Below, in pieces: positions 40,912-64,000 of a stretch of 64,000 nt of DNA. A program made the position numbers and the translations under genes. Position 1 is the first letter of the stretch. The number at the start of each line of letters is the position of its first letter. The stretch spans positions 62,001 through 126,000 of IMG/VR virus record IMGVR_UViG_3300017917_003822, one strand, 5' to 3'. The notes beneath the pieces are model-generated. The model saw only the letters and a list, made by a program, of their open reading frames with translations. It had not been told where the DNA came from and made no database searches.

Positions 40912-42450
40912 ATGCCTGTTACTAATATACAATCTTTAAATTATGGTGACTCACAATCACAGATCATCGACAAAATAAACTACAATTTTGACGAGATTGT
41001 CGAGGCTCATGGGGGAACTCAGGGTATTACCGGACCTACCGGGGATGTTGGACCTATTGGTTCGAGAGGTCCCATCGGATTTACAGGAGGTACCGGGGTT
41101 AGAGGTACTAGATGGTTTGTTGACTTAGTCCAGCCATCGGGAACTTTTAACACTGTTTCAGAGGGTGACTTTTGGATAGACGCCAGTGACGGAAGAATTT
41201 TTATTTTTACCGAATCTGGATGGACAAACACTGGATATACATTAGCTTCAGGAGGTAATATATTTAAACAGGAGGACTCATATTTCTCATCGGGTGGAAC
41301 CGGATCAGCTATTCTTTTTGACCAGATACTACCTCAGAATTATCTCATGATTATAGCTGACAAAGTACCAGAGTCGGGCGTACTGAATGAAAATTTGTCT
41401 AAATTTGTAATTTCCACAGATACCACTGTTAACGATTCACCGGTATTGGAGTTCTCCAAGAGTAATGTTGAATCTGGGGATATCTCTGATTACTCTCAGC
41501 ACCCTATCTTCAGATGGAAAAATTTCGACCCATTAAATAATTCTCTGGTTTTAGAAATACCCGGCGGATCTTTCGTAATAGGTTCCTCTGGAGGATTCCA
41601 ATCAACATTTGACTTTTTAACGGTACAGACACCATCAGCAACTTCCATTTCTTATGGTGCAACTTCAGGATCTGGTATATTTTCTACGGGAGGGTTTGAA
41701 TTAAATACCAGCGGACAATTTAAATTTAGAAGTTCTTTTTTTAATGTCACTGGTGGATCTGGTTATATTTCCGCGCCTGTTAATTTAACGGCAAGTCTTA
41801 CCCCGACAACCCCCTCAATCTTCACTTTTAGTGGTGGAACTGCAGGTTTCAGAACTTCAAGATCCGGTGACAGTTTTAATACGTTGTCAAACTCCGTTTA
41901 TGCTCTTTCGTTAGAATCATCTTCCGATCGTGAATTTTTCATAAACACAAAGGGAAAAATAAGAACAAAAAAAGCGGAGACCTCGATTTCCTATGCATCG
42001 ACTACACCTGGAGCTACCAGTACAGTATCGTCTAATTTGGTTAACTGGTACCTTATTTCAAGAACTTCTACTCCTGTGGCATCCTCAGTTTTACAATCAG
42101 GTAACACCATAGTCATAAATCCGGTTATACCAACCAGCAGCTATGTTGGTATTGGAGTTTATAGTGCAGCTGATTACTCTTGGGGAACGACTGGTGGACT
42201 TGAACCTGGTCAATCCATAGATATTAATGTCCACTATAGTCCAAACACAACTCAAAGGGGTTTTAGTGAGGGCTTCCGTTATATTGGTAAAGGAGCAACC
42301 AGTGGGGACGTATCAAATGTAATCACTTTACCTTTCGCAGCAACTAACGTGGACTTCACTTTAGCTAGAGGAGTTACATCCAGTAATATGACCGTTTTTT
42401 ATAGAGCTTATGGTTCTACTGGTGGATCTGGTGGATCTTTTGTTGTCTGA
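40912..42450 (+). CDS. Collagen-containing tail fibre, paralogue 1
   Basis: GDSQSQIIDKINYNF anchor, (GXY)10, then GDFWID. Confidence 0.75.
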   Translation: MPVTNIQSLNYGDSQSQIIDKINYNFDEIVEAHGGTQGITGPTGDVGPIGSRGPIGFTGGTGVRGTRWFVDLVQPSGTFNTVSEGDFWIDASDGRIFIFTESGWTNTGYTLASGGNIFKQEDSYFSSGGTGSAILFDQILPQNYLMIIADKVPESGVLNENLSKFVISTDTTVNDSPVLEFSKSNVESGDISDYSQHPIFRWKNFDPLNNSLVLEIPGGSFVIGSSGGFQSTFDFLTVQTPSATSISYGATSGSGIFSTGGFELNTSGQFKFRSSFFNVTGGSGYISAPVNLTASLTPTTPSIFTFSGGTAGFRTSRSGDSFNTLSNSVYALSLESSSDREFFINTKGKIRTKKAETSISYASTTPGATSTVSSNLVNWYLISRTSTPVASSVLQSGNTIVINPVIPTSSYVGIGVYSAADYSWGTTGGLEPGQSIDINVHYSPNTTQRGFSEGFRYIGKGATSGDVSNVITLPFAATNVDFTLARGVTSSNMTVFYRAYGSTGGSGGSFVV

Positions 42451-42456
42451 TATATA
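42449..42456 (+). promoter_or_regulatory. Putative late promoter GATATATA
   Basis: Overlaps the TGA stop of fibre 1; 33 nt before fibre 2. Confidence 0.55.
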
Positions 42457-42481
42457 CAATAATTATTCCACTTAATCTCAA

Positions 42482-44167
42482 ATGGCAGAATTAAAATTAC
42501 TAAGAATAGAGGAGGGTGACTCTCAGAAGACTTTAACAGATAAGGTAAATGTAAACTTTGCCAATCTGATAATCTTTGATGGTGGTCCCTATGGTAGAAT
42601 TGGAGAAAAAGGTCCAGAGGGAGCTAAAGGTGCCACCGGGCCGATTGGATCGTATGGAGATCGAGGGGTTCGTGGTACAATTTGGACTGTGGGTCCCTGC
42701 CAGCCAAGCCCAACAGGATCTATAGTCGGTGATTTTTGGTTGAATACAGATAATTCAAATTATGTTTATCGTTTCGGATCGGATAGAAATTGGTCACAAT
42801 ACGGTTTTAATTTAAAATCTGAGGATCTTTTCAGGGTATACGGACCACTTTTGAACTCAGCTGGTACCACTAATAAATACGGTTATTTTCTATCATCCAA
42901 TACTCCGATAGATTATACTGTTGTTATTACCGATAATCCATCTATGGATAGCGGAACTGAATTTTCACCAAACCCAATATTCAATCCACAATATTCAAAG
43001 TTTGTTATATCCGTGGACGGAACAAATCCTAATAAAAACATATTAGAATTCACAAAATCTGATTATGATGATACCTCGTTCACTGAAGGAACTCCTAGAT
43101 TTTATTGGAATCAGGGTCCTACTGCAGACAGAGGAAATTATGGGTTATCCTTCAAAAATTATGACCGGACAAATTTTAGCCTACCTAATTCAACTCTGAG
43201 ATTCGAGTCAACTTCGTCATCTATATCCCTTGATTCAGTCGGATTCAATCTTTATCTAAATAGTCAACAGTTATTTACTGTTAATTCATCAGGTGAAATT
43301 TATTTTGATTTCAATAACGGTACTGCTCTGTTTTCAACAAGAAATATATCATATAGCCCAAGTGGGTTTAATTTAACTACTGGATTAAATGTTTATTCAG
43401 AGTCAAGTGATCAAAATCCTCCACTGCATCTTATATCAGGATCTGCTGGAACCGGAAATTTAAGATACCTTTATAACTCGACGCCAAGTAATTCAGCATT
43501 TTTATTTAGAGTAGTTCAGGGAACAGGTACGTTATTTTCCACCTTTGGTGCGGGATATACTTTCATGGATAAGAGGGTTAATTCTATACAATCCCCACAA
43601 AATTTAACCCAAACTGCTTCAGGAACATATGGGTCAACTACCGTAAATTGGACAGCAGTTATACCATCCATAGCTGTAAATACAACGTCGGGTGATTATT
43701 TTTATGCAAATAATGGATCTGATTTTGTTATTGAAAGATCACCATCAGCTTCTCCCGGTGACAGAGGCATCTGTATATGGACTCCAGCAACAGGTGGAAC
43801 CGTTGGCTTTAACGGAGGATGGTTAAATTTGGTGGAGGATCAAGAGGCTATCACATTTAGAGTACATAGCACAAATCCGGGATCAACAGCAGATTGTTTT
43901 AGATATCTTGGATTGAATACGAGCCAATCCCCAAATATTATACCATCAACGTTTAATTCTGGTGTAAATGAGGCAGTTGCAATTTTACCTGCTGGTGAAT
44001 ATGCTTCCACTGCCGAATTTACGGTTGTTAACGTAAGGGGTGCAACTGGAGGTGCCGGTGGAACAGGAGGAACTCGAAGATGGTACAAAGTATTTTATTC
44101 TGCGTGGGGCGGTAATTTATCAAATACCTATTGTGGGGTTTTAACAACAAGTAATTCAATAGCTTAA
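42482..44167 (+). CDS. Collagen-containing tail fibre, paralogue 2
   Basis: GDSQKTLTDKVNVNF anchor, (GXY)10, then GDFWLN. Confidence 0.75.
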   Translation: MAELKLLRIEEGDSQKTLTDKVNVNFANLIIFDGGPYGRIGEKGPEGAKGATGPIGSYGDRGVRGTIWTVGPCQPSPTGSIVGDFWLNTDNSNYVYRFGSDRNWSQYGFNLKSEDLFRVYGPLLNSAGTTNKYGYFLSSNTPIDYTVVITDNPSMDSGTEFSPNPIFNPQYSKFVISVDGTNPNKNILEFTKSDYDDTSFTEGTPRFYWNQGPTADRGNYGLSFKNYDRTNFSLPNSTLRFESTSSSISLDSVGFNLYLNSQQLFTVNSSGEIYFDFNNGTALFSTRNISYSPSGFNLTTGLNVYSESSDQNPPLHLISGSAGTGNLRYLYNSTPSNSAFLFRVVQGTGTLFSTFGAGYTFMDKRVNSIQSPQNLTQTASGTYGSTTVNWTAVIPSIAVNTTSGDYFYANNGSDFVIERSPSASPGDRGICIWTPATGGTVGFNGGWLNLVEDQEAITFRVHSTNPGSTADCFRYLGLNTSQSPNIIPSTFNSGVNEAVAILPAGEYASTAEFTVVNVRGATGGAGGTGGTRRWYKVFYSAWGGNLSNTYCGVLTTSNSIA

Positions 44168-44168
44168 T

Positions 44169-46343
44169 ATGCATTTCAATACTAAATACATTTTTCAGGG
44201 TGACGATAGAGGTGAAATCGCCAGCAAGATCAATTACAACTTTGATCAGATAATTTCATTTGCTGTTGGTCCTGATGGACATATTGGCCCAAGAGGAGCT
44301 ACTGGATTATATGGTCCTGCAGGATTTAAGGGATTAACAGGAGCTACTGGAGCGAGAGGAACGATGATATTTAAACAACCAACTCAACCTCTTCCTTCTG
44401 AAACACAGGAATATGACATTTGGGTGGATAATTCTTCAGGTGAGGGTGACGTGAATGTTTTAGGAGCTACCGGAACTTGGAATTATTCAGGTTATTCTTT
44501 TTTTAGTTCCTCGTATTTTTCAACCTATTCTTGGATACTTGGACCAGCTGGATCCACTGATAAATATGTTGTTGGTATTAAAGATATAGCAAATGCTCCT
44601 ATCACTAATCTGGTTATAAGCGACGGTAACCCAACATCATCAGTTTCAAATCCAAATAATTCTAAGGTTCTTGTTGCCACGCAAGATCAGACGTCAACAC
44701 CAATATTTACTCTATCTAAAACTGGAGCTATTTCTTCTGGAGTACCTTCTTTTTATTGGGAGTCTACTGGATCCAATCGTAATCTTGTTTATAGGTCAAC
44801 GGGTGATCTTGAGATAATATCTCAGTTGAGGATGTCTATAGATTCAGGCCTGGCAAGAACTCTTTTATTTGGTAATAATGTTAATATAACAGCCTCGAGT
44901 TTTACTGTGGGTGGATCTGGTGATTTCCAACTAGCAGCAAACACAACTGTTGGTAGTGGTGGTATATTTAATGTACAGTCTCAAAATTTACTGATCGCCT
45001 CCTCATATTTCACTAGTGCTGATCCTTTGACTATATACGCAGCATCAGGAAATTATGTTCTCAATGATGTCCCAGTTTCTGCTGGATTAAACTCCGGTAT
45101 AACAATATCAACAACATCCACGGCAAATGATAGTTTTTCGATAAATGATCTAACTGGAAATCCGATTTTATCGGGTAAACCATTTGGATCGGTTGATAGC
45201 GGGAAACACTCACAAACAATATTTGGCTCAACCGGTGGATTTACCGGAGGTACCGCCGGTCCATTTTCATACCATGTAAGAAGGGCTTCTCAAGTTACTA
45301 AAAGCACGGTTACAGTTCTATCAGCTGCTCGATATCTTTCAACCACAGCAGGGACAGATACCCTAAATAACGTTTTCGATCTAACAGATCTGTCTCTTTG
45401 GAATTCAAATGTTATAGTCGTTACACCTACATTGTATACGAATAGCGGACAAGCTGGGGTTTATTTGAGAATACCAGCATCATATTTGAATTCATTAGAG
45501 CCAGTTTATAATACGGGTCGAACCAATATTTATAGAATTCTTTTAAACTCACTAGATTCTAGTTTATCTGCTAGGTTTATTAATGGTTTTGTTTTCAGTT
45601 ACACCAATTACGGTTCAGGAGGACTAACTTCAACGTCGATTTTAAATTACTTTAATTTACCAACTCCGATTTCTATTAATAGTTATTGCCAGTATATCGA
45701 TCTCCATTGGCTAGGAATATCAAACTCTTCCAATCTTAATCCGAGACTTTTCTATAAAGCATGTAACGGTGTCGGTGGATATTTAGAATTAACCAACTTA
45801 AATAGTATAGGATCGGAACAACCTATTACATCCGGGTCATCTCCAACCTCTGGTACAGGAAGCCCGAGTTTTGACGACGGTAGCTTCATTTCAAGTGGTG
45901 GTGGATCGTTTTTCAATCCATTCTGTCCAACTCCAGATATGTTAATTTATTTAGGTGATGGTAATTGGATTGCTGCTGGGGAGCTTAATATCGGAGATAT
46001 AGTATATACGCTTCATGAGCAAACTAACCAGTGGGATTATTATAAAGTTTCTTCAGTTGACAGAGCCACTCAGCCTGTTATCTCTGCAATTATTGGGGGC
46101 AAAGAAATTAAGGTATCAGAGCACCATAGATTCCTCACTGTTGATAATGAGTATGTTTCCATTAACGACCTTCAGATTGGTTCCGAACTTAGAACGATCG
46201 ACGGTTCAGTTAAATTAGAATCTAAAACAAATATAGGAGAGACTGAAGTTGTTAAAATAGAAATTGAAAATGCACATACGTATGTTCTGGAGGGTGTAAT
46301 CTCACACAACGTAAAAATAAGTCAGTTTATAGCAGCACCATAA
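44169..46343 (+). CDS. Collagen-containing tail fibre, paralogue 3, with a C-terminal Hint domain
   Basis: GDDRGEIASKINYNF anchor, (GXY)10, then YDIWVD; C-terminal CPTPDM...SHN. Confidence 0.75.
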   Translation: MHFNTKYIFQGDDRGEIASKINYNFDQIISFAVGPDGHIGPRGATGLYGPAGFKGLTGATGARGTMIFKQPTQPLPSETQEYDIWVDNSSGEGDVNVLGATGTWNYSGYSFFSSSYFSTYSWILGPAGSTDKYVVGIKDIANAPITNLVISDGNPTSSVSNPNNSKVLVATQDQTSTPIFTLSKTGAISSGVPSFYWESTGSNRNLVYRSTGDLEIISQLRMSIDSGLARTLLFGNNVNITASSFTVGGSGDFQLAANTTVGSGGIFNVQSQNLLIASSYFTSADPLTIYAASGNYVLNDVPVSAGLNSGITISTTSTANDSFSINDLTGNPILSGKPFGSVDSGKHSQTIFGSTGGFTGGTAGPFSYHVRRASQVTKSTVTVLSAARYLSTTAGTDTLNNVFDLTDLSLWNSNVIVVTPTLYTNSGQAGVYLRIPASYLNSLEPVYNTGRTNIYRILLNSLDSSLSARFINGFVFSYTNYGSGGLTSTSILNYFNLPTPISINSYCQYIDLHWLGISNSSNLNPRLFYKACNGVGGYLELTNLNSIGSEQPITSGSSPTSGTGSPSFDDGSFISSGGGSFFNPFCPTPDMLIYLGDGNWIAAGELNIGDIVYTLHEQTNQWDYYKVSSVDRATQPVISAIIGGKEIKVSEHHRFLTVDNEYVSINDLQIGSELRTIDGSVKLESKTNIGETEVVKIEIENAHTYVLEGVISHNVKISQFIAAP
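45924..46310 (+). other. Hint / bacterial intein-like (BIL) domain, 129 aa
   Basis: Cys1 (CPTPDM), block B-like VSEHHRF, block F/G VVKIEIENAHTYVLEGVISHN; the +1 residue is Val. Confidence 0.9.
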
Positions 46344-51056: not shown

Positions 51057-51764
51057 ATGAATTTAGTCGGCATAGACTTTTCTATAAACTCACCAGCATT
51101 TTGTTGTTTAAAGGATGGTAAATACACTTGGGGCTCTGTGACAAGATCTGATAGATCTTCGGAATCACTTTTGAAAAATTCAAAAAAACCATACTTTATA
51201 TTGGAACAAGATGACAATTTTGTTCTAAAGTTCGTAGATAAAAAAGATTTACCCGATGACTATTCGGGAAGGGAGAGAGCTAAAATTGGTTACTTCCTTG
51301 AAATAGTTAATGCTCTTTGGGATTCTATAATTGAAGTGATGGGGCACGATCCGTTCCATGTTGCCATGGAGGGTTTAAGCTTCTCGTCAAATGGAAATGC
51401 ACTTATTGATATTTCGATGGCAACTGGACTACTTAGGGAAAGAATAATTTCCGAGGTGGGTTCAGATTCTTTTCATGTATTTTCTCCAACCACCATTAAA
51501 AAATATGCGGTAAAGGGAAATGCAAAAAAGGATGAATTGTATCATGCTCTTTATAATTTTAAAGAAGATGAAACAAATTTGGAACATTTTGGTAAAATAT
51601 TAGAAACAAACAAAGAGGAGTGGATTACCCCAAGTAAGGTGGTAAATAAACCGATCGATGATATTGTGGACGCAACTTGGATTAATTTATATTTAAAGAA
51701 AGAATTAGGAGAATTTTATGGAATTAAAGGAAATCTTGAAGGAACATCTAAATCAGGCCTCTGA
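51057..51764 (+). CDS. RuvC-like (RNase H fold) nuclease / Holliday junction resolvase
   Basis: LVGIDFSINSPA, VAMEGLSF, SPTTIKK...GNAKK and DDIVDA motifs. Confidence 0.8.
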   Translation: MNLVGIDFSINSPAFCCLKDGKYTWGSVTRSDRSSESLLKNSKKPYFILEQDDNFVLKFVDKKDLPDDYSGRERAKIGYFLEIVNALWDSIIEVMGHDPFHVAMEGLSFSSNGNALIDISMATGLLRERIISEVGSDSFHVFSPTTIKKYAVKGNAKKDELYHALYNFKEDETNLEHFGKILETNKEEWITPSKVVNKPIDDIVDATWINLYLKKELGEFYGIKGNLEGTSKSGL

Positions 51765-52320
51765 CATTTTAAATGACTTCATTAACAACGACGAGTATCT
51801 AAGCTCGGTAGAGGAGGCTGCTCAGACTATAATCACAGCACTACAAAACGGTAATAAAATAATATCAGCAGGTAATGGCGGATCTATGTGTGACGCTATG
51901 CACTTTGCGGAAGAACTATCTGGCAGATGGAGGGAAGACAGAAAACCTCTGGCTGCCATTTCTGTATCAGATCCCTCCCATATAACTTGCGTTGGTAACG
52001 ATTACGGATTTGACCAGATTTTTTCCAGATATCTAGATGCTGTTGGGAACGAAGGTGATGTATTTTTTGGTATAACGACCTCAGGTAATTCTAATAATAT
52101 CACCCGAGCGCTGGTTACTGCCAAGCGTAAAGGTATGAGAACTGTCATACTCACATCAGACAGGCCTGAGAGCGACGTACGATTAAAATTTAATCATCTT
52201 ATTGATAATACCATACTAACACCAAGAAACAAATATGCGGACCGTACGCAAGAACTACATATCAAAATAATACATTCCCTGATTGATATGATAGAGCGAA
52301 AATTGGGATTGAAAAATTAA
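51718..52320 (+). CDS. gmhA: Phosphoheptose (sedoheptulose-7-phosphate) isomerase
   Basis: GNGGSMCDAMHFAEEL, SHITCVGNDYGF, TSGNS and ADRTQELHIKIIH. The catalytic His/Glu/Gln/His set is present. Confidence 0.93.
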   Translation: MELKEILKEHLNQASDILNDFINNDEYLSSVEEAAQTIITALQNGNKIISAGNGGSMCDAMHFAEELSGRWREDRKPLAAISVSDPSHITCVGNDYGFDQIFSRYLDAVGNEGDVFFGITTSGNSNNITRALVTAKRKGMRTVILTSDRPESDVRLKFNHLIDNTILTPRNKYADRTQELHIKIIHSLIDMIERKLGLKN

Positions 52321-58252: not shown

Positions 58253-60313
58253 ATGTCAGGAATAAGTCATCTATATGATATCTATAATAAGAAGGGTAAA
58301 GAGTTTATTGATAATCTCTTCAATTCTTATGTGACCGTTAATGAAAAAATGGACGGATCAGCCTTTGTTTTCGAAAGAGATTTAGAAACTGGTAGATTTA
58401 TCTTTTATAAAAGGGACCAAAGAAACCCAATTACGTTGGTGGATAGGACCTTAATGAAATACTATGAAATTCCTATTCAGTACATAGAATCTTTACCTCC
58501 TCATATTATAAAGGAGATCCCGAGAGGTTGGAAATTTGGATTAGAGTATTTTGCAAATTTAAAGCCTGTTGAGATAGCATATGATAGATTACCAAAAAAT
58601 AATCTGATCTTATCTTACGTTCATCCAAAAGACGAGAACGGAAAACAAACAACGATACAAAACAAGGAAAAACTGGACACTTGGGCAGATTTGATTGGTG
58701 TGGAAAGACCTCCGATAGTTTTTCAGGGGTATCTTTCGGACGAACAGAAAGACAAGATTTTAGACTTTTTAAGAACCCCTTTTGATCAACTTGTCACAGA
58801 ATACAGAACAAAAAGTTTTGTTAGGTACATTATAGGTGTTCTGAACCCAGAAGCCAAGAATAGTGCTTTAAATAAAGATCTGGATAAACCCATTGAGGGA
58901 ATAGTATTTAGATTTGGTGAGGAGAATAACGAATCTGAGCCTATTCTTTCTAAAATGGTCGATCCGGTCTTTACTGAAATGGCTAAGGAAAAGTACAAGA
59001 AGAAAACTGAGGAAAAACCTAGTGATTTCTTGGGGATAACCATACTGGATGTGATGAATTTTATACTGGAGAGAGGAGTGGAAAGCTTCAATATCAGTGG
59101 AGACAGCGACGATGAGAGATACATCTCGTTTATATCTGACGTATTTTCAAAATTCCTAGATGAGTATGGGTACAAATATAAGGGTGCTGACTTTCAGGAA
59201 CCTGAATATCTTAAAAAGGATGAATTTAGATTAAATAGACCACTAATAAAAGACAAGAGAGTCCTTAGTTATCTTGAATCTGACGATTCCTACGAATCTT
59301 TGTTTAAGTTAATATTAAATTCCTTCAGAAAAATTAAAAAAAGAGCTGGTGGAATAATAACATCAGGAATAATAGATCAGTTTAATTTACTGGTTAAAGA
59401 TATACAGGGAGCAGTTTCTAGTAAATCTACACCAAAAATACAGGAATCACAGGTTCCTTCATTTCTGGACTTTAAGAAAAATAATCTCTCACTTAGAAAT
59501 ATTGACTATACAACATCAGAGAGTGAGGAATCTGATAAATCTGGTGATGAATTTGATCATTTCTATTCATATAACGAATTTATCTCTGCCTTAGAAACTC
59601 TTGACACTCAGGAAAAACCGAGCGAGATAGTGACGGAGGTCGAGGAGAATTTGGAAGAAAATAAAAAAAGTGAACTTCAGCCTGTTAATCTTCTCGTTGG
59701 TAGATTCCAGCCCTTCCATAACGGTCACCTCAAGATGATTAAAAAGATGGAGGAGGAAAATGAACTTCCTAGCATTATAGCGGTAGTCCATCCGGGTCAT
59801 AATAAATCTGGCAAAACACCATTTGACGTGGATCTAGTTTCTAAATATATGGAGACACTTGTTAGAGATAACCCAGGAAAGATATTGGGATATTTTATTG
59901 TCAATCGAGGGTTGCTTGGTGTAATATACGGAAAGGCCAAAGAACTTGGATACCTTGTTAAAGCTATTGCTGCTGGGGATGATCGTGTTGACGATTATAA
60001 TAAACAAGTGGAATATCTTAAAAAAGCTGGTGGCGATTTTCCGGAGGACATTAAAATAATCCAAACACAAAGATCAGGTAGCGGAACTGATGTGAGAGAT
60101 AAAATCGAAAGTGAAGATTTTGTTGCTTTTAAAAAAATGGTTCCCCCTGCTATATCCTCGTTTTATGAACAGCTGGTTTCTGCACAGAAGGGAAGAAGCA
60201 TCAAGGAATCCTCTGAGACTATCTATTACCTAAATGAATTCGGTGACGAGAAAACTCTGGAAGAAGTTCAGAACGAAATAAAAGAAAAAGAAATTAAAAA
60301 TAAGGAAGAATAA
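58253..60313 (+). CDS. Fusion of an ATP-dependent ligase-type NTase and a HIGH-motif cytidylyltransferase/NMNAT-like domain
   Basis: N-terminal motifs I (NEKMDGS), III (GLEYF), IV (IEGIVF) and V (SKMVD). C-terminal VGRFQPFHNGH...AGDDR...SGTDVR. Confidence 0.75.
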   Translation: MSGISHLYDIYNKKGKEFIDNLFNSYVTVNEKMDGSAFVFERDLETGRFIFYKRDQRNPITLVDRTLMKYYEIPIQYIESLPPHIIKEIPRGWKFGLEYFANLKPVEIAYDRLPKNNLILSYVHPKDENGKQTTIQNKEKLDTWADLIGVERPPIVFQGYLSDEQKDKILDFLRTPFDQLVTEYRTKSFVRYIIGVLNPEAKNSALNKDLDKPIEGIVFRFGEENNESEPILSKMVDPVFTEMAKEKYKKKTEEKPSDFLGITILDVMNFILERGVESFNISGDSDDERYISFISDVFSKFLDEYGYKYKGADFQEPEYLKKDEFRLNRPLIKDKRVLSYLESDDSYESLFKLILNSFRKIKKRAGGIITSGIIDQFNLLVKDIQGAVSSKSTPKIQESQVPSFLDFKKNNLSLRNIDYTTSESEESDKSGDEFDHFYSYNEFISALETLDTQEKPSEIVTEVEENLEENKKSELQPVNLLVGRFQPFHNGHLKMIKKMEEENELPSIIAVVHPGHNKSGKTPFDVDLVSKYMETLVRDNPGKILGYFIVNRGLLGVIYGKAKELGYLVKAIAAGDDRVDDYNKQVEYLKKAGGDFPEDIKIIQTQRSGSGTDVRDKIESEDFVAFKKMVPPAISSFYEQLVSAQKGRSIKESSETIYYLNEFGDEKTLEEVQNEIKEKEIKNKEE

Positions 60314-62020: not shown

Positions 62021-64000
62021 ATGGCTCAATTTCCAATCAATCCCCGAATAGGGCAAGCTTTTCTAGCAGATTCCAAAATATATGTTTGGAGTGGAACTCA
62101 GTGGGTTGCGGCACAGGTTGGAGGGACAGGAGACGGATCATCAGGAACCTCTGGAACTAGTGGAGTTGATGGAAATTTTTATGGATCCTCTGGAACCTCT
62201 GGAACCTCCGGGGTTAATGGATCCAGTGGAACAAGTGGTACACCGGGATCTTCTGGAATATCAGGATCTTTCGGAACAAGTGGATCTAGTGGAACATCAG
62301 GATCTACCGGAAGTCCAGGATCTTCTGGGTCTAGTGGATCTTCTGGTGCTAATGGTTCGTCTGGAACATCAGGAATTAATGGATCCAGTGGAACAAGTGG
62401 CTCGAATGGATCATCAGGAACTTCTGGATCTAGTGGAAGCAGCGGAACTTCAGGCACTAGAGGATCTAGTGGAACTTCGGGTTCTTCGGGAACATCTGGT
62501 GCTAATGGTTCTTCAGGAACATCTGGATCTAATGGATCTTCGGGTGTCAGTGGAATTAATGGTATAGATGGAACTTCTGGATCTAGTGGAACTTCAGGTA
62601 CTAGAGGATCTAGTGGAACTTCTGGTTCTTCAGGAACATCTGGTGCTAATGGTTCTTCAGGAACCTCTGGTGCTAACGGTTCATCGGGTTCATCGGGAGT
62701 TAGTGGAATTAATGGTGTTGATGGAACCTCAGGATCTAGTGGAAGTAGCGGAACTTCAGGTACTGGCGGATCGAGTGGATCTTCGGGTTCTTCCGGAACA
62801 TCTGGCTCTAATGGTTCTTCAGGAACATCTGGTGCTAATGGTTCATCGGGATCTTCGGGTGTCAGTGGAATTAATGGTGTTGATGGAACTTCAGGATCTA
62901 GCGGTACTTCTGGTGTTAATGGCTCTAGTGGAACATCCGGTTCATCAGGATCGTCAGGAACCAGTGGAATCACCGGATCGTCGGGATCTAGTGGATCTTC
63001 GGGTGTCAGTGGAATTAATGGTGTTGATGGAACTTCAGGATCTAGCGGTACTTCTGGTGTTAATGGATCTAGTGGTACTTCGGGATCTGGTGGATCGAGT
63101 GGAACTTCAGGATCTGGTGGATCTAGTGGAACTTCGGGATCTAGAGGATCTTCAGGAACCAGTGGGACAAGTGGATCCTCAGGGTCTAGTGGAGATTCTG
63201 GCTCTAGTGGAACATCCGGTTCATCAGGATCGTCAGGAACCAGTGGAATCACTGGATCGTCGGGATCTAGTGGATCGTCGGGTGTCAGTGGAGTTAATGG
63301 TGTTGATGGAACCTCAGGATCTAGTGGTACCTCTGGTGTTAATGGATCTAGTGGTACTTCGGGATCTGGTGGATCGAGTGGAACTTCAGGATCTAGAGGA
63401 TCTTCGGGAACCAGTGGAACCAGTGGATCTTCAGGATCTAGTGGAGCTTCTGGATCTAGTGGTACCTCCGGTTCTAGTGGTTTATCAGGATCTAGTGGAA
63501 CTTCGGGATCTAGAGGATCTTCGGGAACCAGTGGAACCAGTGGATCTTCAGGATCTAGTGGATCTTCAGGAGTCAGCGGGGTTAACGGTGTTGATGGTTC
63601 TTCCGGATCCAGTGGAACATCCGGAAGTAACGGAACTCCGGGTTCTTCAGGTTCTTCAGGTTCTTCAGGTTCTTCAGGTTCTTCAGGTTCTTCAGGAACT
63701 TCGGGATCTAGAGGATCCAGTGGAACATCTGGTATAAACGGTTCTTCCGGCTCTTCGGGAACGTCAGGGTCCAGTGGAACATCAGGGACAAGAGGAACTA
63801 GCGGAACATCTGGTATAAGTGGAAACGACGCATCTAATTCAGGGAGATGGGAATATTCAAATTCGATTGCACCGACCAATCCAGGCACCAGCAGATTCTG
63901 TACAAATAGTTCTTCTCTAGGATCTGTTAATGTATTAAGTATTAGTATTTACGACATAAACTCGGTGGATTACACTAAATGGTTTCAAGCATCTGACACA
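62021..64000 (+). CDS. Gly-Ser/Thr collagen-like fibre protein, truncated by the window end and absent from the ORF track
   Basis: ATG at 62021 (MAQFPINPRIGQAF..YVWSGTQW) with an open frame to 64000; a long Gly-X-Y region, then a non-repetitive domain (GRWEY..). Confidence 0.85.
   Translation, partial: MAQFPINPRIGQAFLADSKIYVWSGTQWVAAQVGGTGDGSSGTSGTSGVDGNFYGSSGTSGTSGVNGSSGTSGTPGSSGISGSFGTSGSSGTSGSTGSPGSSGSSGSSGANGSSGTSGINGSSGTSGSNGSSGTSGSSGSSGTSGTRGSSGTSGSSGTSGANGSSGTSGSNGSSGVSGINGIDGTSGSSGTSGTRGSSGTSGSSGTSGANGSSGTSGANGSSGSSGVSGINGVDGTSGSSGSSGTSGTGGSSGSSGSSGTSGSNGSSGTSGANGSSGSSGVSGINGVDGTSGSSGTSGVNGSSGTSGSSGSSGTSGITGSSGSSGSSGVSGINGVDGTSGSSGTSGVNGSSGTSGSGGSSGTSGSGGSSGTSGSRGSSGTSGTSGSSGSSGDSGSSGTSGSSGSSGTSGITGSSGSSGSSGVSGVNGVDGTSGSSGTSGVNGSSGTSGSGGSSGTSGSRGSSGTSGTSGSSGSSGASGSSGTSGSSGLSGSSGTSGSRGSSGTSGTSGSSGSSGSSGVSGVNGVDGSSGSSGTSGSNGTPGSSGSSGSSGSSGSSGSSGTSGSRGSSGTSGINGSSGSSGTSGSSGTSGTRGTSGTSGISGNDASNSGRWEYSNSIAPTNPGTSRFCTNSSSLGSVNVLSISIYDINSVDYTKWFQASDT
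62183..63829 (+). repeat. About 183 Gly-X-Y triplets (GSS/GTS/GVS/GIN/GVD), including (GGTTCTTCA)6 at 63641-63694 and larger internal duplications
   Basis: Visible directly; 1647 nt equals 183 x 9 nt. Confidence 0.92.

What the first reader, a model, noticed from the sequence alone, without database searches (positions are those of the whole stretch)
62021..64000. Unlisted giant, almost proline-free Gly-Ser-Ser/Gly-Thr-Ser collagen-like fibre
Seen: about 183 apparently uninterrupted Gly-X-Y triplets dominated by Ser/Thr, built from nested duplications (a block of about 70 nt repeated near 62850 and 62993, and a 9-bp unit repeated 6 times). Established: Ser-rich, Pro-poor triplets make weak triple helices, and Thr glycosylation is known to stabilise an invertebrate cuticle collagen. 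Inference: either a fibre of roughly 150 nm that needs O-glycosylation (linking it to the GT finding) or a polyglycine-II bundle. Its length is probably variable through recombination.
Basis: partly seen in the sequence, partly recalled or inferred. Interest (0 to 1): 0.6.

Follow-up and report, generated by a model that had tools for sequence, protein, structure and literature searches.

The report
Serine-rich collagen-like phage fibre protein
The repeat is real and is the stalk of a 987-residue fibre protein of a 270-kb jumbo phage. It is a collagen-like stalk with almost no proline that ends in a self-cleaving folding domain, a type common in environmental phages but never studied biophysically.

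Summary
There are 183 uninterrupted Gly-X-Y triplets (window 62183-63829), with only 3 Pro and GSS/GTS dominant. There is an exact 74-nt repeat at 62849 and 62993, and (GGTTCTTCA)x6 at 63641-63694.

The ORF runs past the window end to virtual coordinate 64984 (987 aa). After the long run come an unnamed 120-aa beta-rich domain, a second run of 35 triplets, a short tip, and a Peptidase_S74 intramolecular-chaperone domain with its Ser893/Lys898 dyad.

The genome is a 99%-complete jumbo myophage record. Its capsid is closest to Lak, Tenacibaculum and PAU-type phages.

A syntenic ortholog keeps both termini at about 80% identity. It has 126+119 triplets instead of 183+35, and an unrelated middle domain. 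Stalk length and the middle module are therefore variable between relatives.

Pro-free GSS/GTS collagen plus S74 is widespread in metagenomic phage proteins.

The glycosyltransferase link is not supported. No GT was found in the window, none lies within 13 kb, and none lies beside five relatives. A polyglycine-II bundle is unlikely.

Verdict: a new member of a known kind, of moderate interest.

The parts
62021..64000 (+). First 660 codons of a 987-codon fibre gene. The ORF continues past the window end to virtual coordinate 64984 (L001:4021-6984; protein P0001).
   Evidence: Pfam Collagen 2.6e-92 and Peptidase_S74 4e-17. PHROG tail-fibre families.
62021..62134 (+). N-terminal 38-aa non-collagen segment (MAQFPINPRIGQAFLADSKIYVWSGTQWV...), presumed virion-attachment end.
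   Evidence: About 78% identical in the syntenic ortholog on L009. Only weak tblastn matches (E about 0.3) to the N-termini of annotated tail-fibre proteins of Erwinia jumbo phages and cyanophages.
62135..62182 (+). Five Gly-X-Y triplets followed by a single extra residue (Tyr54). This is the only phase break before the long run.
   Evidence: The same GNFY break is present in the L009 ortholog.
62183..63829 (+). 183 uninterrupted Gly-X-Y triplets (aa 55-603). 75 GSS, 51 GTS, 3 Pro. Predicted length about 157 nm if triple-helical.
62849..62922 (+). First copy of the exact 74-nt repeat. It encodes the recurring GVSGINGVDG motif region.
   Evidence: second copy 144 nt away. The motif recurs 7 times here and 7 times in the ortholog.
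62993..63066 (+). Second copy of the exact 74-nt repeat.
62894..63451 (+). Tandem duplication of a 279-nt unit (62894-63172 and 63173-63451), 87% identical.
63641..63694 (+). Six exact tandem copies of GGTTCTTCA, giving (Gly-Ser-Ser)x6.
63830..64000 (+). Start of the 120-aa globular beta-rich domain (aa 604-723; continues to virtual 64189 = L001:5830-6189) that interrupts the collagen stalk. Beyond the window follow a second collagen run of 35 triplets (aa 724-828, L001:6190-6504), a tip segment (aa 829-892, L001:6505-6696), and the S74 chaperone domain (aa 893-987, L001:6697-6981).
   Evidence: AlphaFold model pLDDT 92, pTM 0.85. No Pfam match, no PDB sequence match and no clear PDB fold match. 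100 cluster representatives at E<=1e-3, 66 of them with collagen runs. Predicted-structure matches at TM about 0.8 in viral collagen-repeat proteins.

Best explanation
The gene encodes the subunit of a long, thin fibre of a jumbo myophage.

Shown: the domain order is a 38-aa N-terminal segment, then 5+183 Gly-X-Y triplets, then a 120-aa beta-rich domain, then 35 triplets, then a 64-aa tip, then a Peptidase_S74 domain with its Ser893/Lys898 dyad.

Inferred from what is established for S74 domains in endosialidase, T5 pb1 and S16 gp37 fibres: three chains are brought into register by the C-terminal S74 domain. The collagen-like stalk then zips up from the C-terminal end towards the N-terminal end, much as a procollagen C-propeptide nucleates a triple helix. 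The chaperone then cuts itself off at Ser893, leaving a mature chain of about 79 kDa.

The result would be a trimeric rod about 190-200 nm long. The N-terminal end would be anchored on the virion. A three-lobed node would sit about 160 nm out, with a small distal tip beyond it. The collagen part serves as a cheap, length-adjustable spacer that extends the reach of the binding modules.

The near-perfect DNA repeats let the stalk length change by slippage or recombination in steps of whole triplets. The middle domain is exchangeable.

Stability without proline is inferred to come from several sources: sheer length, C-terminal registration, hydration through Ser/Thr hydroxyls, and a cool aquatic habitat. 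It is not inferred to come from an obligatory modification.
For: Architecture.

S74 domain: 62.7-68.5 bits against a cut-off of 22. The SDERLK motif aligns with SDRRIK of the S16 gp37 distal tail fibre (6f45) and SDERLK of the phage GP4 tail fibre (8jov). Ser893 and Lys898 were located. This is the only S74 protein in the genome.

Virus identity: an IMG/VR virus record, 99% complete, with a Gp23-type capsid and no NCLDV capsid. The capsid is closest to huge and jumbo phages: LR756500 at 46%, Lak at 40%, then Tenacibaculum, Chryseobacterium, Flavobacterium and PAU phages.

Fibre class: PHROG tail-fibre families match. The C-terminus matches annotated tail-fibre or baseplate proteins of S-SRM01, HTVC008M and ACG-2014f at 38-50%.

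Relatives: 1721 proteins reach E<=1e-3. Most of the 120 listed are GSS/GTS-rich and Pro-free, many carry S74, and their uninterrupted runs span 11-136 triplets.

Ortholog: on syntenic L009 the neighbours are 54-96% identical, most of them 76-96%. The ortholog has the same termini, 126+119 triplets, and an unrelated middle domain.

Structural context in a relative: P0094 lies after Gp23 and gp13 and before a pectate-lyase-like gene.

Recent repeat activity: exact 74-nt and 54-nt repeats.
Against: The gene is not in an obvious tail or baseplate module here. It lies between an RNA-ligase/NMNAT fusion with small DUF genes on one side and Hsp20/Hsp70 on the other. The attachment site is therefore unknown.

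PHROG tail-fibre scores are largely driven by the low-complexity collagen part.

The composition has 1.6% Pro and 4.3% charged residues in X/Y. It lacks both stabilising strategies documented for bacterial collagens (PMC8968730), so an unmodified helix may be marginal.

No expression or virion data are available.
Confidence: 0.72

Rival explanations
1. One reading: the Ser/Thr-rich helix is too weak on its own and needs O-glycosylation by a phage glycosyltransferase to fold or persist.
For: 77% of X/Y residues are Ser or Thr, with almost no Pro or charge. The genome has two GT2-family genes, at C1:140133 and C1:204451, and a SIS-domain sugar isomerase at window 51718-52317. BclA glycosylation is an established precedent (PMC8968730). 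The Riftia cuticle collagen precedent rests on my own knowledge.
Against: No GT is detectable in the window. The nearest lies 13 kb downstream. No GT lies within 10 kb of five related fibre genes. Thr is in X (57) and hardly ever in Y (3), whereas the known stabilising glycosylation is on Y-position Thr. Phage GT2 genes have many other possible substrates.
Confidence: 0.12
2. It is the same molecule but not a tail fibre. It is a head- or neck-attached fibre (a whisker or decoration) that aids dispersal or first contact, like the 50-100 nm head-fibre-like appendages of Tenacibaculum phages PTm1 and PTm5.
For: The capsid protein groups with the Tenacibaculum jumbo phages. Their head appendages are described in PMC10537231, citing Kawato 2020. 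The gene lies outside the run of large structural ORFs and short-collagen fibre genes at window 14998-50205. In relative P0094 the gene follows the neck protein gp13. SPP1 gp12 is a collagen-like capsid binder (PMC7602432).
Against: S74-terminated proteins characterised so far are tail fibres or tailspikes (PHROG names). No collagen/S74 match to a Tenacibaculum phage appeared among the listed tblastn hits.
Confidence: 0.25
3. A polyglycine-II bundle or sandwich, as in snow-flea antifreeze protein or the gp38 adhesin of phage S16, rather than a collagen triple helix.
For: Gly-rich tripeptide periodicity with small side chains. PGII sandwiches exist in T-even adhesins (own knowledge). S16 gp37, which carries that adhesin, is the best PDB sequence match to the C-terminus.
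Against: Gly is exactly one in three for 549 residues with no turn-forming breaks. Bulky V, I, R, N and D residues occupy X and Y. The Pfam Collagen profile scores 303 bits. The C-terminal domain is a trimerising chaperone. PGII bundles, from my own knowledge, use short helices, more Gly and connecting loops.
Confidence: 0.03
4. The repeat is an unstructured Gly/Ser linker (an entropic tether), not a helix at all.
For: Low complexity and very low Pro and charge content. The helix was not verified here.
Against: A disordered linker has no need to keep Gly phase. Here the phase is kept for 183 triplets, and also in the ortholog's runs of 126 and 119 triplets, and all repeat units are multiples of 9 nt. 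The same strict phase holds across dozens of relatives.
Confidence: 0.08

Closest known systems
Phage tail fibres and tailspikes with a C-terminal intramolecular chaperone (Peptidase_S74): K1F endosialidase, T5 pb1, S16 gp37 (PDB 6f45), phage GP4 tail fibre (8jov)
   Same: A C-terminal S74 domain with the SDxRxK Ser/Lys motif, placed at the end of a trimeric fibre.
   Different: The shaft here is collagen-like, not a triple beta-helix or coiled coil. Only about 64 residues lie between the last triplet and the cleavage site.
Collagen-like putative tail fibres of T4-like cyanophages (P-SSM2 orf028; S-CAM7 and S-H34 collagen-repeat proteins)
   Same: Long Gly-X-Y runs with Ser/Thr in X and Y in a large myophage. 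They were proposed as tail fibres in 2005 (PMC1079782). They share the predicted fold of the middle domain.
   Different: A different phage lineage (Lak/PTm1/PAU-like capsid). The uninterrupted run here (183) is longer than any in the 120 relatives sampled, whose maximum is 136.
Bacterial collagen-like proteins (Scl1/2, BclA) and prophage collagens of E. coli O157
   Same: Hydroxyproline-free Gly-X-Y stalk registered by a non-collagen trimerisation domain. Length polymorphism arises through repeats.
   Different: Those have about 19-31% Pro in X and 31-48% Thr in Y, or many charged residues (PMC8968730). This one has 1.6% Pro, Ser in Y (75%) and Thr in X. Its registration domain is a self-cleaving S74 domain, not a C1q-like or coiled-coil domain.
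Giant-virus collagen-repeat proteins (Marseillevirus LCMAC102, Indivirus, Klosneuvirus; Mimivirus collagens)
   Same: The same predicted 120-aa domain embedded in collagen repeats (TM 0.77-0.83).
   Different: There is no Lys in the repeats, so the Mimivirus-type hydroxylysine glycosylation cannot apply. The host is bacterial.

Membership tests
Collagen triple-helix repeat (PF01391) | Gly at every third residue over long uninterrupted runs | tested here: met
   Runs of 183 and 35 triplets.
Collagen triple-helix repeat (PF01391) | Profile score above Pfam's gathering threshold | tested here: met
   303 bits against 27.2.
Collagen triple-helix repeat (PF01391) | Three chains form a staggered triple helix | not testable with these tools
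This needs CD, EM or a trimer prediction.
Collagen triple-helix repeat (PF01391) | High imino-acid content in X/Y (typical of animal collagens and many bacterial ones, but not strictly defining) | tested here: not met
   7 Pro among 446 X/Y residues, which is 1.6%.
Peptidase_S74 intramolecular chaperone domain | Profile match above threshold at the extreme C-terminus | tested here: met
   aa 893-950, 62.7 bits against 22; 68.5 bits in the genome scan.
Peptidase_S74 intramolecular chaperone domain | Catalytic Ser and Lys five residues apart (S-D-x-R-x-K) | tested here: met
   S893-D-E-R-L-K898, aligned with the same motif in 6f45 and 8jov.
Peptidase_S74 intramolecular chaperone domain | Autoproteolytic release after trimer folding | not testable with these tools
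   Needs expression of wild type and S893A followed by SDS-PAGE or MS.
Phage tail fibre | Similarity to annotated tail-fibre families | tested here: met
   phrog_6320, 5073, 8745, 5668 and 33119. tblastn matches to annotated tail-fibre or baseplate proteins. The collagen part inflates the scores.
Phage tail fibre | Gene sits in the tail or baseplate module | tested here: inconclusive
   Here it is flanked by RNA-ligase/NMNAT, DUF4494, DUF3008 and Hsp20/Hsp70. Relative P0094 is next to gp13 and a pectate-lyase-like gene.
Phage tail fibre | Present in virions, attached to the tail | not testable with these tools
   There is no isolate. This needs proteomics or EM.
Glycosylated collagen-like fibres (BclA or Riftia type) | Thr in the Y position as the glycan acceptor | tested here: not met
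   Thr occurs 57 times in X and 3 times in Y of the long run.
Glycosylated collagen-like fibres (BclA or Riftia type) | Dedicated glycosyltransferase genes linked to the fibre gene | tested here: not met
   No GT in the window. The nearest GT2 is 13 kb away. None lies beside five relatives.
Polyglycine-II bundle proteins | Short PGII helices joined by turns, with Gly well above one third | tested here: not met
   Gly is exactly one third, with no breaks in 549 residues and bulky X/Y residues.

The most novel reading that the evidence does not exclude
Pro-free, charge-poor GSS/GTS repeats may be a distinct and so far uncharacterised way of building a stable collagen triple helix. It would rely on Ser/Thr hydration and on periodic hydrophobic GVSG(I/V)NG(V/I)DG clamps, registered by a self-cleaving S74 propeptide. 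It would be punctuated by an unnamed 120-aa domain family with no solved relative, shared by phage and giant-virus collagens and acting as an exchangeable ligand-binding node in the middle of the stalk.
Probability: 0.3. Interest if true: 0.55.

Novelty: new member of a known kind. Interest (0 to 1): 0.38.

Why it matters
Collagen stability rules come from Pro/Hyp-rich animal sequences and a few Pro-, Thr- or charge-rich bacterial ones. This protein and its hundreds of metagenomic relatives show that phages routinely build stalks over 100 nm long from Gly-Ser-Ser and Gly-Thr-Ser alone. If these fold unmodified, they extend the known sequence space of the triple helix and offer very simple, hydrophilic designer-collagen scaffolds.

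The pairing with an S74 domain gives a compact, testable analogue of procollagen C-propeptide-driven folding.

The comparison with the ortholog shows fibre length and a mid-stalk domain being swapped between otherwise similar jumbo phages. That is relevant to how such phages tune reach and host recognition.

Tried and rejected
- Megablast of the upstream 4.7 kb against isolate phages gave no match.
- An exact-sequence lookup of P0001 in the contig collection found nothing on record.
- A word search with the middle domain alone scored nothing. The exhaustive search then found 100 cluster representatives.
- PDB sequence and fold searches for the middle domain gave nothing convincing: no sequence hit, Foldseek best E 0.011 and VIA best Z 5.9, which is within the noise range the tool itself states.
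- The NCLDV capsid search was negative but uninformative, because its controls were silent. Virus type rests on the Gp23 hits.
There is therefore no verdict on trimerisation.
- Contigs of four runs were laid on the gene. The unique flanks and the middle domain are present at 99% identity or more. The repeat is shattered into 100-150-nt unitigs, and the many 'joints' have short sides (20-38 nt) and may come from other collagen genes. I rejected them as evidence for length polymorphism. The zero depth over L001:6600-7500 is unexplained, and the tool warns that holes prove nothing.
- The promoter and terminator scan around the gene found nothing useful.
- Matches of the N-terminal 38 aa to annotated tail fibres are only E about 0.3 and are treated as a hint.
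- I first assumed a marine origin from the cyanophage and pelagiphage C-terminal hits. The run search points mainly to pond, freshwater and wastewater samples, so I dropped that assumption.
Full report
**Observation.** The ORF that begins at ATG 62021 is open to the end of the window. The window is bases 62001-126000 of a single 270,629-bp contig with 36% GC. In that contig the frame continues to a stop at virtual window coordinate 64984. The product is 987 aa (P0001; L001:4021-6984).

Counting Gly at every third residue gives three runs. There are five triplets, then a one-residue break (Tyr54), then exactly 183 uninterrupted triplets (aa 55-603, window 62183-63829). A second run of 35 triplets (aa 724-828) lies beyond the window.

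In the long run the X position is S89, T57, V17, I11, A6. The Y position is S137, N21, R7, D7. GSS occurs 75 times and GTS 51 times. There are three Pro, all in Y, and 15 charged residues.

- an exact 74-nt repeat at 62849 and 62993;
- a 279-nt unit duplicated in tandem at 87% identity;
- GGTTCTTCA six times exactly at 63641-63694.

The long open frames on the other strand and in the other plus frames are the expected by-product of a triplet repeat. Only the reported frame has domain matches and a conserved ortholog.

**What the whole protein is.** Pfam finds Collagen (303 bits) and, at aa 893-950, Peptidase_S74, the intramolecular chaperone of endosialidases and other phage fibres (62.7 bits, cut-off 22). 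S74 occurs only once in the genome.

The C-terminal 159 residues match two solved tail-fibre chains by sequence. These are the distal long-tail-fibre subunit of phage S16 (6f45) and the tail fibre of phage GP4 (8jov). The alignment places this protein's S893-D-E-R-L-K898 on their SDRRIK and SDERLK motifs.

The domain order is therefore:
- a 38-aa N-terminal segment;
- a collagen run of 5+183 triplets;
- a 120-aa globular domain (aa 604-723);
- a collagen run of 35 triplets;
- a 64-aa tip;
- the S74 domain.

At 0.286 nm per residue the collagen parts would measure 4 + 157 + 30 nm.

**The virus.** The record is classed as a virus and is 99% complete. It has Gp23-family capsid matches and no NCLDV capsid match, although that search had silent controls. 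The capsid protein is closest to an uncultured 462-kb phage (46%) and the Lak megaphages (about 40%). Next come jumbo phages of Tenacibaculum, Chryseobacterium, Flavobacterium and Sphingomonas PAU. This is a jumbo myophage, probably of a Bacteroidota host.

Near-identical DNA occurs in 20 public runs from 15 studies. These are mostly pond, freshwater, aquatic and wastewater samples.

**Relatives.** A search with residues 600-987 found 1721 proteins at E<=1e-3. Most of the 120 listed carry Collagen, many also carry S74, and their Gly-X-Y regions are overwhelmingly GSS/GTS with 0-3% Pro. Uninterrupted runs range from 11 to 136 triplets, so the 183 here is the longest in the sample. PHROGs files the protein with tail-fibre families. 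The composition is thus a class property, not a peculiarity of this gene. Sullivan et al. noted Gly-X-Y repeats rich in Pro, Ser or Thr in cyanophage P-SSM2 and proposed tail fibres in 2005 (PMC1079782).

**An ortholog shows what varies.** Contig L009 (IMG/VR) is syntenic with this locus. Its flanking genes are 54-96% identical in protein, most of them 76-96%. Its fibre gene has the same N-terminus (about 78%) and C-terminus (82%). It carries 126+119 triplets instead of 183+35. Its 122-aa middle domain shows no detectable relation to the one here (hhalign probability 0.4%).

Stalk length and the middle module are therefore the variable parts, and the two ends are conserved. Within-population polymorphism could not be tested. 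Only assembled contigs were available, and they break into 100-150-nt pieces inside the repeat.

**The middle domain.** It has no Pfam match and no PDB sequence match. An exhaustive search found 100 cluster representatives at E<=1e-3. Of these, 66 also carry at least 8 Gly-X-Y triplets. The domain usually abuts a collagen run directly on one or both sides, and some proteins have up to six copies in my domain parse, or eight matched stretches.

With a 21-sequence alignment AlphaFold gives a confident model: pLDDT 92, pTM 0.85, seven strands and one helix. Nothing in the PDB matches clearly (Foldseek best E 0.011; VIA best Z 5.9, inside the tool's stated noise range).

Predicted viral structures match at TM about 0.8. 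Nearly all are 'collagen triple helix repeat' proteins. They come from uncultured tailed phages, Synechococcus phages S-CAM7 and S-H34, and giant viruses (Marseillevirus LCMAC102, Indivirus, Klosneuvirus). One ESM-Atlas cluster combines the domain with Collagen and the T4 gp9/10 N-terminal domain.

It is a recurrent, unnamed, collagen-embedded module. Its exchange between close relatives is what one expects of a binding module, but that is inference.

**Mechanism.** Established work on S74 domains shows that they trimerise, drive folding of the fibre upstream, and then cleave themselves off at the conserved Ser (Schwarzer 2007 and Schulz 2010, the latter listed among the references seen). By inference, the same happens here. 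The collagen stalk would zip from the C-terminal registration point. Cleavage at Ser893 would leave a chain of about 79 kDa. This step is not shown.

**Glycosylation.** I scanned the window ORFs of 120 aa or more against Pfam and found no glycosyltransferase. The GT2 matches in the genome lie at C1:140133 (13 kb downstream, outside the window), at C1:204451, and weakly at C1:4709. Five related fibre genes have no GT within 10 kb.

Thr is almost entirely in X, whereas the documented stabilising glycosylation acts on Y-position Thr. The bacterial collagen composition and BclA are covered in PMC8968730. The Riftia case rests on my own knowledge. There is no Lys in the repeats, so the Mimivirus-type route is excluded. 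Glycosylation remains possible but has no specific support.

**Other rivals.** A polyglycine-II bundle does not fit an unbroken one-in-three Gly phase with V, I, R, N and D in X/Y. A disordered linker would not need to conserve phase across 183 triplets, across the ortholog, and across dozens of relatives.

Whether the fibre sits on the tail or on the head or neck is open. The gene lies outside the block of giant structural ORFs and short-collagen fibre genes at window 14998-50205. The related Tenacibaculum phages carry head-fibre-like appendages (PMC10537231). On the other side, a relative's gene lies between gp13 and a tailspike-like gene, and all characterised S74 proteins are tail fibres or spikes.

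**Limits.** There was no trimer prediction. There were no raw reads, no expression data and no virion data.

**Verdict.** The feature is real and correctly described. It belongs to a known but experimentally neglected kind: phage collagen-like fibres with an S74 chaperone. It is an extreme member in run length. The glycosyltransferase link and the polyglycine-II alternative are not supported.

Noticed in passing
window 40912-46343 (three tandem genes of 512, 561 and 724 aa): Each has a non-collagen N-terminal segment of about 33 aa followed by a short Pro-containing collagen run of 8-11 triplets. After the run comes a GDFW..D...W-type motif that resembles the N-terminus of the big fibre. They sit directly after ORFs of 1221 and 1838 aa, so this is probably the real tail-fibre or baseplate cluster.
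   Followed up: partly
window 45801-46340 (C-terminus of the 724-aa protein): Sub-threshold Hint/intein-like matches: Intein_splicing E 7e-5 and PT-HINT E 9e-4, both below the gathering scores. The sequence ends in an ...AHTYVLEGVISHN block. This may be a second kind of self-processing C-terminus on a fibre protein.
   Followed up: partly
window 62021 to virtual 64984 and L009:7277-10510: The motif GVSG(I/V)NG(V/I)DG puts three consecutive hydrophobic residues in X positions. It recurs 7 times in this protein and 7 times in the ortholog, at spacings of about 48-96 residues within the long run. The full three-triplet motif is absent from the other 120 relatives; a shorter two-triplet form appears in seven of them. 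Its function is unknown; clamp, hinge or binding site are possibilities.
   Followed up: partly
L001:8216-10553 (virtual window 66216-68553): The phage encodes Hsp20 and a full-length Hsp70/DnaK (861 bits), starting about 1.2 kb downstream of the fibre gene's stop. The L009 relative shows the same arrangement. These could be folding helpers for large structural proteins.
   Followed up: no
L001:13102-14508 (virtual window 71102-72508): A family-B DNA polymerase ORF of only 468 aa covers the exonuclease domain and the start of the polymerase domain. This suggests a split or interrupted polB, as is annotated for the related phage MA9V-1.
   Followed up: no
window 58253-60313: A 686-aa fusion of an RNA-ligase-like N-terminal domain with a cytidylyltransferase/NMNAT-like HIGH-motif domain. 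It is 85% identical in L009.
   Followed up: no
G000:C1:4101-4373: A 2OG-Fe(II) oxygenase of the prolyl-4-hydroxylase-like family (PF13640, 53 bits). All seven Pro in the big fibre's collagen runs are in the Y position, which from my own knowledge is the P4H substrate position. The three short-collagen proteins are Pro-rich. This is a possible hydroxylation link and was not tested.
   Followed up: no
L001:3001-7500 in public runs: Near-identical copies of this locus occur in 20 runs from 15 studies spanning pond, freshwater, lake, wastewater, soil, salt-marsh and marine labels. Runs X2 and X3, from different studies, share most of their single-base differences. That is an unusually wide distribution for one phage genotype.
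   Followed up: partly
window 51718-52317: A SIS_2-domain protein (phosphoheptose-isomerase-like, E 1e-20) lies next to a gp32-like ssDNA-binding protein. It is the only sugar-metabolism gene detected in the window.
   Followed up: no
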